Of a stretch of DNA of 10,020 nt, positions 6,215 through 6,608 are shown in pieces. Within the stretch, counting starts at the first letter, position 1. Each line of letters opens with the position of its first letter. Source of the stretch: Octopus sinensis. Taxonomy: Eukaryota. Under the pieces are notes generated by a model. It did not search any database. It was given only the letters and a program-made list of their open reading frames with translations, and was not told the DNA's origin. The stretch is from NCBI RefSeq assembly GCF_006345805.1, contig NW_021827698.1, positions 1 through 10,020 on the forward strand. Reading direction: 5' to 3'. Both the position numbers and the translations under genes were made by a program.

Positions 6215-6587
6215 TTGATCTCTTTGAAAATCTAAGAGGAAGGGGAGAATTATGGACAACTGCTTCAAAACCTCCAGTTTCTGTATCCAGATTATAAATT
6301 CTCGTTTATACCAATTATAATTGGTCCGCTTGGTTTTCTGGGTAAATAAATGCCTAAGTAAATCTCTGGATAAATTAGGGTTTTCAGAAAAAAAGAATTA
6401 ACAGACTAACTCGCACATTGCAAATACAGTTTGTAAGTGGAACAATAAAAATATGCAACACTTTCGTCAAGTTTAAAATGTGAATCTGCTTTTGTTATCT
6501 ACATTGAAACGATGAAGCATTGTATCGTATTTTAGAAACAAGCTCCTTCCTGCGAGAAGAATTTAAATAATTGAAAACAGAAAAGAA
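6215..6587 (+). mobile_element. 5'-truncated RLE-type non-LTR retrotransposon 3' end (R4/Dong-like), ORF remnant 6218-6483 plus 3' UTR
   Basis: My translation is ISLKI*EEGENYGQLLQNLQFLYPDYKFSFIPIIIGPLGFL, frameshift, NKCLSKSLDKLGFSEKK, frameshift, INRLTRTLQIQFVSGTIKICNTFVKFKM*(6481-6483). This fits the RLE C-terminus K..Y..L...L.......IPIIIGALG...K.L...L.KLG. The clade assignment is tentative. Confidence 0.78.
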
Positions 6588-6608
6588 CATACATACATAC
6601 ATACATAC
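6588..6608. repeat. (CATA)5 tract directly after the RLE 3' UTR
   Basis: CATACATACATACATACATAC. Confidence 0.95.

What the first reader, a model, noticed from the sequence alone, without database searches (positions are those of the whole stretch)
6215..6608. RLE retrotransposon embedded in (CATA)n: candidate tetranucleotide-microsatellite-targeting element
Seen: a decayed RLE C-terminus plus 3' UTR whose truncated 5' end abuts an 880-bp (CATA)n-rich tract and whose 3' end runs straight into (CATA)5. Established: R4/Dong-type RLE elements are sequence-specific, and Dong targets (TAA)n. Inference: this lineage targets (CATA)n/(TATG)n, or generates it as a tail, and could help seed the abundant CATA tracts here. 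I am not aware of a described (CATA)n-specific element, but I cannot check this.
Basis: partly seen in the sequence, partly recalled or inferred. Interest (0 to 1): 0.72.

Follow-up and report, generated by a model that had tools for sequence, protein, structure and literature searches.

The report
Microsatellite-targeting retrotransposon remnant in octopus DNA
A dead tail-end fragment of a jumping gene sits inside a long CATA repeat, and its relatives in octopus and other animals sit inside the same kind of four-letter repeat, so this group of elements aims at such repeats; that extends a known behaviour and is not a new one.

Summary
Window 6215-6483 is the decayed last ~88 codons of a restriction-like-endonuclease (RLE) LINE: 68.5% aa identity to an intact ORF (E=3e-37), one premature stop, two frameshifts. 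A 103-bp 3'UTR follows, then (ACAT)5.5. Its 5' end abuts (CATA)136.

The targeting idea is supported by independent copies. Two Octopus vulgaris copies and several relatives on metagenome contigs end in sense-oriented (ACAT)n/ACAY-like sequence. Four 5'-truncated copies (window, L019, L006, L037) also carry it at the 5' junction. Sister families sit the same way in (ACTT)n, among them an intact 4.7-kb element with a 1153-aa ORF and repeats on both sides. Perfect CATA tracts cover about 0.2-1.6% of the octopus sequence examined.

The family is not the classical Dong type. A separate Dong-like fragment with a (TAA)n tail lies at 9486-9866(-). The two share about 32% identity over about 930 aa. 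The clade name (R4/Dong or HERO) is unresolved.

Microsatellite-specific RLE LINEs are known (Dong, Togen, some HERO), and the APE-type Waldo targets (ACAY)n, so this is a new member of a known kind. The idea that the element seeds the local CATA tracts has no support.

The parts
5344..5666 (+). Degenerate ACAY-type repeats (CACATA, CACAAA, CATG/CATA mixtures). This is the upstream part of the repeat tract in which the element sits.
   Evidence: TRF rows 5344-5514 (CACATA) and 5493-5694; sequence read.
5667..6213 (+). (CATA)n microsatellite, 136 units, 85% matches. It is the 5' flank of the insertion and the presumed target tract.
   Evidence: TRF period 4, score 702. It has the same strand and motif as the 3' repeat. 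Analogous 5' tracts occur in L006 ((ATAC)44), L037 ((ACAT)9) and L019 ((CATC)n(CATA)3).
6215..6483 (+). 5'-truncated, decayed C-terminal coding remnant: the last ~88 codons of the ORF, i.e. the distal part of the restriction-like endonuclease domain. It is read in three frames (about 6218-6346, 6340-6395, 6373-6480). Premature stop at 6233-6235; natural stop TGA at 6481-6483.
   Evidence: Subfamily HMM 46 and 25 bits. 68.5% aa identity to P0148, E=3e-37. 79% DNA identity to L002 with +4, +1 and -3 indels.
6484..6586 (+). 3' untranslated region of the element.
   Evidence: It lies between the natural stop codon and the repeat. It is alignable with the 3'UTR of the O. vulgaris copy L003, which changes to ACAY-like sequence at the same position.
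6587..6608 (+). (ACAT)5.5 at the 3' junction. It is either the element's repeat tail, or the downstream remainder of the target, or both.
   Evidence: TRF 100% matches. The same motif and strand occur at the 3' ends of L019, L006, L028, L032 and L037.

Best explanation
Window 6215-6608 is a dead, heavily 5'-truncated copy of a non-LTR retrotransposon. The element has a single ORF carrying a reverse transcriptase, a CCHC zinc knuckle and a C-terminal restriction-like (PD-(D/E)XK) endonuclease.

The family belongs to a clade found in octopus and on metagenome contigs from unidentified hosts, some of them coral metagenomes. Members of this clade integrate, in one fixed orientation, into tetranucleotide microsatellites: (ACAT)n/ACAY for this family and its nearest relatives, and (ACTT)n for sister families.

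Inferred mechanism, by analogy with R2 and Dong. The protein nicks the (ATGT)n strand of the repeat. The freed 3' end pairs with the (ACAU)n repeats at the 3' end of the element's RNA and primes reverse transcription (TPRT). Synthesis usually aborts early, which leaves 5'-truncated copies. The result is repeat | element | repeat.

Shown here: the homology, the domain architecture in relatives, the fold match to R2, and the recurrent same-strand repeats at both junctions.

Inferred: the cleavage specificity, the tail pairing, and the direction of causality (targeting rather than retention).
For: Identity of the fragment.

RLE nature:
- P0148 and relatives carry the motifs C..C..H..C, RHD, NRPD, E.SCPAD and EKEN.YG.
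- An AlphaFold model of P0159 (mean pLDDT 71, over 90 in much of the core) has R2 proteins as its five best PDB matches (E 2e-7 to 2e-3, TM 0.51-0.57). Restriction enzymes and cap-snatching PD-(D/E)XK nucleases follow.
- Full-length relatives L028 (1213 aa) and L022 (1153 aa) show RVT_1 plus zf-RVT and no APE domain. Their only PDB sequence hits are R2 proteins.

(ACAT) junctions, given as 5' flank / 3' flank:
- Window copy 1: 136 units / 5.5 units.
- L019, O. vulgaris: (CATC)n(CATA)3 / about 12 degenerate units.
- L006: (ATAC)44 / ACATACATACAC.
- L037: (ACAT)9 / (ACAT)7+.
- L028 and L032: 3' (ACAT)n running to the contig end.
- L003 and L004: ACAY-like 3' flanks.

(ACTT) junctions:
- L017: (CTTA)54 | 4.3 kb | (ACTT)29.
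- L022: (CTTA)25 | intact element | (CTTA)12.
- L038: (CTTA)17 directly 5' of a truncated copy.
- L005, L024, L026, L027, L033, L039: repeat at the 3' end.

All repeats read AC(A/T)(T/G) on the coding strand. Background CATA density is 0.2-1.6%. In a rough NJ tree, window copy 1 groups with the ACAT/ACAY-flanked L002, L004, L019, L003 and L028.

Literature: most RLE clades are target-specific, including for microsatellites (PMC4640811, PMC7998251).
Against: - There is only one copy in the window. The comparison set is small: about 8 ACAT-type and about 11 ACTT-type loci. It is also biased towards copies that still carry ORFs.
- Some copies break the pattern at the 5' side. L018 has a unique 5' flank, L024 has (ATA)n, and L003 has (TG)n/(CA)n.
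- In ACAT-type copies the 3' tract is short (3-12 units) and the 5' tract long. Random nicking within a tract does not predict this.
- Microsatellite drift could blur which repeat was the original target. Examples are the compound tracts ACTT+ACTG and ACTT+ACTC in L027 and L005.
Confidence: 0.75

Rival explanations
1. Tail only. The element's RNA ends in (ACAU)n, as CR1/L2-type LINEs end in short repeats, and it inserts without target preference. The 3' repeat is a copied tail, and the 5' CATA tract here is coincidence or later expansion.
For: The 3' tracts of ACAT-type copies are short and tail-like (5.5, 3 and about 12 units). L018 has a repeat only at its 3' end, with a unique 5' flank.
Against: Four independent 5'-truncated ACAT-type copies, plus L038 and the near-full-length L017 and L022 of the ACTT type, have the same repeat on the same strand directly at the 5' junction. 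Background density is 0.2-1.6%.
Confidence: 0.1
2. Capture or retention without endonuclease specificity. The element integrates wherever its repeat tail can pair with a broken or nicked microsatellite. Alternatively, copies are simply retained in microsatellite-rich, low-recombination DNA, as was proposed for Waldo-A/B near CA repeats in Drosophila.
For: The window is unusually rich in simple repeats (61 TRF rows). PMC3812793 reports the passive-accumulation explanation for Waldo-A/B. The 5' junctions show possible microhomology: the parental sequence reads 'GAACAT' at the window's truncation point.
Against: Orientation and motif are constant across taxa and families. The junctions are exact (repeat | element) rather than merely nearby. 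Intact elements such as L022 are bounded by the repeat on both sides. Retention alone does not explain why sister families sit in a different tetranucleotide.
Confidence: 0.12
3. Chance. A non-specific LINE fragment happened to land in one of the many CATA tracts of this region.
For: About 6% of this window is perfect CATA/TATG repeat, most of it the tract beside copy 1.
Against: The same arrangement recurs in two O. vulgaris chromosomes and in unrelated metagenome contigs. The joint probability under 0.2-1.6% density is negligible.
Confidence: 0.03

Closest known systems
Dong (R4/Dong clade; RLE LINE specific for (TAA)n)
   Same: - A single ORF with RT, a CCHC knuckle and a C-terminal RLE.
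- Insertion into a microsatellite, with the repeat at the 3' end.
- A Dong-like element with a (TAA)n tail (L001) is about 32% identical over about 930 aa to L028 and L022.
- The two C-terminal profiles cross-hit.
- A Dong-like copy with a (TAA)n tail lies in the same window at 9486-9866(-).
   Different: - The target is a tetranucleotide (ACAT or ACTT), not TAA.
- The C-terminal subfamily is distinct: 'EYWWN..NRPD.I.W..E.SCPAD.N...EKEN.YGPL.RN.Q..YP.YKF' against 'ILWDF..RKPDIV.VDK..IDVA.PGD.RV.EKE.EK..KY'.
- There is no DNA similarity between window copies 1 and 2.
Waldo (R1 clade; WaldoAg1/2, WaldoFs1), specific for (ACAY)n
   Same: The same class of target repeat. (ACAT)n is a subset of (ACAY)n, and the octopus copies L003 and L004 have mixed ACAC/ACAT flanks (PMC3812793, citing Kojima & Fujiwara 2003).
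   Different: Waldo uses an N-terminal apurinic-like endonuclease and belongs to the R1 clade of insects. The present family has a C-terminal RLE and no APE domain. The shared target is therefore convergence, not kinship.
Togen and microsatellite-specific HERO families (RLE LINEs)
   Same: These are RLE elements reported to be specific for microsatellites: Togen for (TG)n in fish, and some HERO families in a leech (PMC4640811 and its ref. 20). Among molluscs, cephalopods are reported to carry R2-Hero and R4-Dong LINEs (PMC10294476).
   Different: Togen's target motif differs. I had no HERO or Togen sequences to compare, so the present clade may or may not be HERO.
R2 (28S rDNA-specific RLE LINE; solved structures 9dou, 9nl2, 8gh6)
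   Same: The predicted fold of the C-terminal 261 aa matches the R2 linker/zinc-knuckle/RLE region. The RT is the best PDB sequence match. The TPRT mechanism is inferred by analogy.
   Different: The target is a microsatellite, not rDNA. No N-terminal zinc-finger or Myb match was found. Sequence identity is low: 13-17% in the structural alignment.

Membership tests
RLE-encoding non-LTR retrotransposons (Repbase R2 group: CRE, NeSL, R4, R2, HERO) | Reverse transcriptase domain in the same ORF, upstream of the endonuclease. | tested here: met
   RVT_1 in L028 (E=1e-25), L022 (2e-22) and L005 (1e-18), contiguous with the C-terminal domain homologous to copy 1. The window copy itself is truncated downstream of the RT.
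RLE-encoding non-LTR retrotransposons (Repbase R2 group: CRE, NeSL, R4, R2, HERO) | CCHC zinc knuckle followed by a PD-(D/E)XK restriction-like endonuclease fold at the C-terminus. | tested here: met
   The motifs C..C..H..C, RPD, E..CP.D and EK are present in P0148, P0152 and P0159. zf-RVT hits. The AF2 model's top five PDB matches are R2 proteins, followed by restriction enzymes and cap-snatching nucleases. A sequence-profile search of the PDB found nothing.
RLE-encoding non-LTR retrotransposons (Repbase R2 group: CRE, NeSL, R4, R2, HERO) | No N-terminal apurinic-like endonuclease. | tested here: met
   The Pfam scan of the full-length ORFs of L028 and L022 shows only RVT_1 and zf-RVT.
R4/Dong clade | RT groups with R4/Dong reference elements in a phylogeny. 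| not testable with these tools
   No R4, Dong, Rex6, HERO or NeSL reference sequences were available. The only indirect evidence is about 32% identity over about 930 aa to a Dong-like element with a (TAA)n tail, against RT-only matches to R2.
R4/Dong clade | Target is 28S rDNA (R4) or (TAA)n (Dong). | tested here: not met
   Copy 1 and its relatives are flanked by (ACAT)n or (ACTT)n. By contrast, window copy 2 and L001 end in (TAA)n.
R4/Dong clade | Divergent SANT/Myb-like domain near the N-terminus (Schön et al. 2021, PMC7998251). | tested here: inconclusive
   L028 and L022 share a conserved N-terminal motif ('RRxNRDY..KWTYxLNxDL...LWD..HPE'), but it has no significant Pfam match.
HERO clade | RT groups with HERO references; some families are microsatellite-specific. 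| not testable with these tools
   No reference sequences were available. The literature reports microsatellite-specific HERO families (PMC4640811) and R2-Hero in cephalopods (PMC10294476), so membership is possible.
Waldo (R1 clade) | APE-type endonuclease and R1-clade RT. | tested here: not met
   The endonuclease is a C-terminal RLE and there is no APE domain. Only the target motif (ACAY) is shared.
Microsatellite-specific LINEs (functional category) | The same repeat, on the same strand, at both junctions, including the 5' junction of 5'-truncated copies. | tested here: met
   ACAT type: window copy 1, L019, L006, L037. ACTT type: L017, L022, L038. Exceptions: L018, L024 and L003 at the 5' side.
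Microsatellite-specific LINEs (functional category) | Empty (pre-insertion) sites are uninterrupted repeat tracts; the endonuclease cleaves the repeat. | not tested
   No orthologous empty site or second haplotype could be fetched. Biochemistry is outside these tools.

The most novel reading that the evidence does not exclude
This is a widespread, still active clade of RLE retrotransposons. Intact 1153- and 1213-aa ORFs occur on L022 and L028. Its target is re-programmed among tetranucleotide repeats (ACAT, ACTT, possibly ACTG) mainly by the repeat carried at the 3' end of its own RNA: pairing of the tail with the nicked repeat, rather than protein-DNA recognition, selects the site. That would make it a naturally RNA-guided, easily retargetable integrase-like system.
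Probability: 0.15. Interest if true: 0.7.

Novelty: new member of a known kind. Interest (0 to 1): 0.42.

Why it matters
Site-specific RLE retrotransposons, above all R2, are being developed for safe-harbour gene insertion. How they change targets is an open question. A clade whose families sit in different four-base repeats offers natural material for asking whether the protein or the RNA tail sets the target. That material includes intact full-length copies and 42%-identical proteins with different targets (L028 against L022). For genome annotation, the finding explains why some long CATA tracts in octopus are interrupted, and it shows that 'Dong/R4-like' fragments in cephalopods comprise at least two lineages with different repeat partners. 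The finding stays within a behaviour already established for Dong, Togen, some HERO families and Waldo, and the family may already be in Repbase/Dfam.

Tried and rejected
- The word-indexed protein search with the frameshift-corrected copy-1 peptide found no candidate. Pfam found nothing for either window peptide.
An exact 37-aa in-frame piece worked.
- I used three consensus strings recalled from memory only as search seeds. All statistics were then recomputed with profiles built solely from database proteins.
- An exact look-up of ten window ORFs, meant to identify the source contig, found none. Cephalopod origin rests instead on 14 interspersed-repeat matches to O. vulgaris loci and on O. 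vulgaris proteins P0122 and P0137.
- Copy 1 against copy 2 gave no DNA or tblastx similarity, so they are not one family.
- A profile search of PDB sequences with the C-terminal alignment found nothing. Only the fold search linked the domain to R2.
- Rfam gathering-threshold scans of the window, L017, L006 and L019 gave no hit, so no HDV-like ribozyme or other known RNA was found.
- P0139 is not on record, and L020 (P0143) is an internal fragment without informative ends.
- P0254 gave ten scaffolds that are one orthologous locus from coral metagenomes (TARA scaffolds), not ten insertions.
- The supplement of PMC4640811 held no usable reference alignment or Togen junctions.
- I considered (ACTG)n as a third target and rejected it. 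Both cases follow 3'-shortened copies, and compound tracts suggest repeat drift.

Full report
THE OBSERVATION

Reading 5000-7200 and running TRF shows a (CATA)136 tract at 5667-6213. It is preceded from 5344 by degenerate CA/CACATA/CATG repeats. A non-repetitive 372-bp stretch follows at 6215-6586, then (ACAT)5.5 at 6587-6608.

Translation gives, across three frames, '..KI*EEGENYGQLLQNLQFLYPDYKFSFIPIIIGPLGFLG / VNKCLSKSLDKLGFSEKK / RINRLTRTLQIQFVSGTIKICNTFVKFKM*'. The stop is TGA at 6481-6483.

The same window holds a second, unrelated-looking fragment on the minus strand (9866-9486). It ends in a short 3'UTR and (TAA)n at 9394-9333.

IS COPY 1 REALLY A RETROTRANSPOSON REMNANT?

Pfam and the word-indexed search found nothing with the raw peptide. 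I seeded a profile search with the two window peptides plus three consensus strings recalled from memory, used as leads only. I then rebuilt a profile from the 120 database proteins alone.
- It hits the minus-strand fragment at 80 bits (E=4e-26).
- It hits copy 1 weakly in one frame (9.7 bits, E=2e-4).
- The frameshift-corrected copy-1 peptide scores 22 bits; the best of 2000 shuffles scores 7.3.

An exhaustive phmmer search of 1.84 billion representatives with an exact 37-aa in-frame piece of copy 1 returned 27 proteins (E down to 9e-10, up to 69% identity). These define a distinct subfamily: '..EYWWN..NRPD.I.W....C..E.SCPAD.N...K..EKEN.YGPL.RNLQ.LYP.YKF.FIPII.GALG..P..L...L..LGF...E......LQ...I.GTVKICKTF..F'.

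A profile of these proteins retrieved 119 more.
- The copy-1 peptide is 68.5% identical over 89 aa to P0148 (E=3e-37).
- The subfamily HMM hits window 6218-6367 (46 bits) and 6373-6477 (25 bits).
- The DNA is 77-79% identical to P0148's contig L002. The differences are one premature stop, a +4 and a +1 frameshift, and a 3-bp deletion.

WHAT KIND OF ELEMENT IS IT?

P0148 and the longer relatives carry a C..C..H..C knuckle, RHD, NRPD, E.SCPAD and EKEN.YG.

Contigs encoding relatives show an RVT_1 ORF immediately upstream (L005, L017). Two contigs carry intact single ORFs: L022 with 1153 aa and L028 with 1213 aa. Each shows RVT_1 and zf-RVT and no APE domain.

R2 proteins are the best or only PDB sequence hits. 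An AlphaFold model of the C-terminal 261 aa of P0159 (mean pLDDT 71, core often above 90) has R2Tg, Platysternon R2 and Bombyx R2 as its five best structural matches (E 2e-7 to 2e-3, TM 0.51-0.57). PD-(D/E)XK nucleases follow. The element is therefore an RLE-type LINE.

Its relation to Dong is real but distant.
- L001, a Dong-like element with a 904-aa RT ORF and a (TAA)n tail, is about 32% identical over about 930 aa to L028 and L022. Those two are 42% identical to each other.
- The two C-terminal profiles cross-hit.
- Window copies 1 and 2 share no DNA similarity.

I had no R4, Dong, HERO or NeSL reference sequences, so the clade name is open. Among molluscs, cephalopods are reported to carry both R2-Hero and R4-Dong (PMC10294476).

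TARGET OR TAIL?

I then tabulated the junctions.

ACAT/ACAY type:
- Window copy 1: (CATA)136 | element | (ACAT)5.5.
- L019 (O. vulgaris OX597824.1): (CATC)n(CATA)3 | copy truncated about 20 bp from the window's truncation point | 30-bp UTR | about 12 degenerate ACAT units.
- L006: (ATAC)44 | truncated copy | 230-bp UTR | ACATACATACAC.
- L037: (ACAT)9 | truncated copy | (ACAT)7+.
- L028 and L032: (ACAT)n running to the contig end.
- L003 (O. vulgaris OX597827.1) and L004: ACAY-like degenerate 3' flanks. L003's 3'UTR is alignable with the window's up to the point where both switch to repeat.

ACTT type:
- L017: (CTTA)54 | 4.3-kb element | (ACTT)29.
- L022: (CTTA)25 | intact element | (CTTA)12. 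This contig consists of the element and its two flanking tracts.
- L038: (CTTA)17 directly 5' of a truncated copy.
- L021 and L023: repeat at the 5' end.
- L005, L024, L026, L027, L033, L039: repeat at the 3' end.

Every repeat reads AC(A/T)(T/G) on the coding strand. Perfect CATA tracts cover only 0.2-1.6% of the octopus sequence examined.

Exceptions:
- L018 has a unique 5' flank and (CTGA)62 at its 3' end.
- L024 has (ATA)17 at its 5' end.
- L003 has (TG)n/(CA)n at its 5' end.
- The ten TARA scaffolds are one coral-metagenome locus in which a 3'-shortened copy is followed by (GACT)n.

I do not count ACTG as a separate target. Both cases follow shortened 3' ends. The compound tracts (CTTA)(ACTG)(GACG) in L027 and (TTAC)(ACTC) in L005 suggest single-base repeat drift.

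A rough NJ tree places copy 1 with the ACAT/ACAY-flanked L002, L004, L019, L003 and L028. L037 is a separate, deeper ACAT branch.

MECHANISM

Shown: the architecture, the fold and the junction pattern.

Inferred from R2 and Dong biology: the RLE nicks the (ATGT)n strand. That 3' end pairs with the (ACAU)n end of the RNA and primes cDNA synthesis. Premature termination gives 5'-truncated copies.

Two features remain unexplained. In ACAT-type copies the 5' tract is long and the 3' tract short. The 5' ends of the three octopus copies fall within about 45 bp of each other.

COMPARISON WITH WHAT IS KNOWN
- Dong targets (TAA)n in insects, molluscs and cnidarians (PMC3812793, PMC7998251).
- Togen (RLE) targets (TG)n, and some HERO families are microsatellite-specific (PMC4640811).
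- Waldo (R1 clade, APE) targets (ACAY)n (PMC3812793).

The present family shows the known behaviour of an RLE LINE inserting into a microsatellite, with a tetranucleotide target that overlaps Waldo's by convergence. I found no paper describing an RLE element specific for (ACAT)n or (ACTT)n. Repbase and Dfam could not be searched, and octopus libraries exist there.

VERDICT

The targeting inference is supported. The Dong/R4 label, the claim that no such element has been described, and the seeding idea are corrected. The finding is a new member of a known kind, of moderate interest. Most of that interest lies in the clade-level pattern and in the intact full-length copies, which would allow target choice to be tested.

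Noticed in passing
window 9333-9866 (minus strand): A second, unrelated RLE fragment of the classical Dong type lies here. The C-terminal coding remnant is at 9866-9486 (80 bits, E=4e-26 against a profile of 120 database proteins). A roughly 90-bp 3'UTR follows, then (TAA)n at 9394-9333. Its 5' side meets an A-tailed SINE-like sequence near 9925-9940.
   Followed up: partly
window 6665-6910: A 246-bp palindrome with arms at 6665-6773 and 6803-6910 (99-100% complementary) and a 29-nt loop. It lies between the (ACAT)5.5 after copy 1 (plus a 56-bp unique spacer) and the next (CATA)21 at 6909-6993. It has no copy in any fetched locus. It could be a foldback or MITE insertion that split a longer CATA tract.
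   Followed up: partly
window 2240-2609, also 91-315: A 190-bp unit repeated 1.9 times, together with other interspersed repeats, matches several places in the O. vulgaris loci L003 and L019 at 75-90% identity. These are probably tRNA-derived SINEs. They are the basis for calling the window cephalopod.
   Followed up: partly
L022 1-4871 and L028 157-3798: These are intact full-length members on metagenome contigs. L022 reads (CTTA)25 | 5'UTR | 1153-aa ORF | about 1.05-kb 3'UTR | (CTTA)12. L028 has a 1213-aa ORF with (ATAC)18+ at the 3' end. Both look potentially active. Their hosts are unknown.
   Followed up: partly
L017 2039-6330 vs L018 2716-5853: These two copies are 88% identical over 3.2 kb but end differently. 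L017 has about 340 bp more 3'UTR and then (ACTT)29. L018 has a short hairpin and then (CTGA)62. This is either a switch of 3' module and repeat, or a deletion plus repeat drift.
   Followed up: partly
window 6215; L019 3150; L003 10037: The 5' truncation points of the three octopus copies fall within about 45 bp of each other in the parental ORF (L002 375-420). This could be a truncation hot spot, microhomology with the repeat, or a short non-autonomous derivative.
   Followed up: no
L024 1-53 and 4134-4161: One ACTT-type element has (ATA)17, the Dong-type repeat, at its 5' end and (CTTA)7+ at its 3' end.
   Followed up: no
window 4548-4935 and 8398-8458: A long (GAT/GAC/GGT)n trinucleotide region, and a perfect 19-bp x 3.2 tandem repeat (CTTACACTTGGTGGGATAA). 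Both are unrelated to the finding.
   Followed up: no
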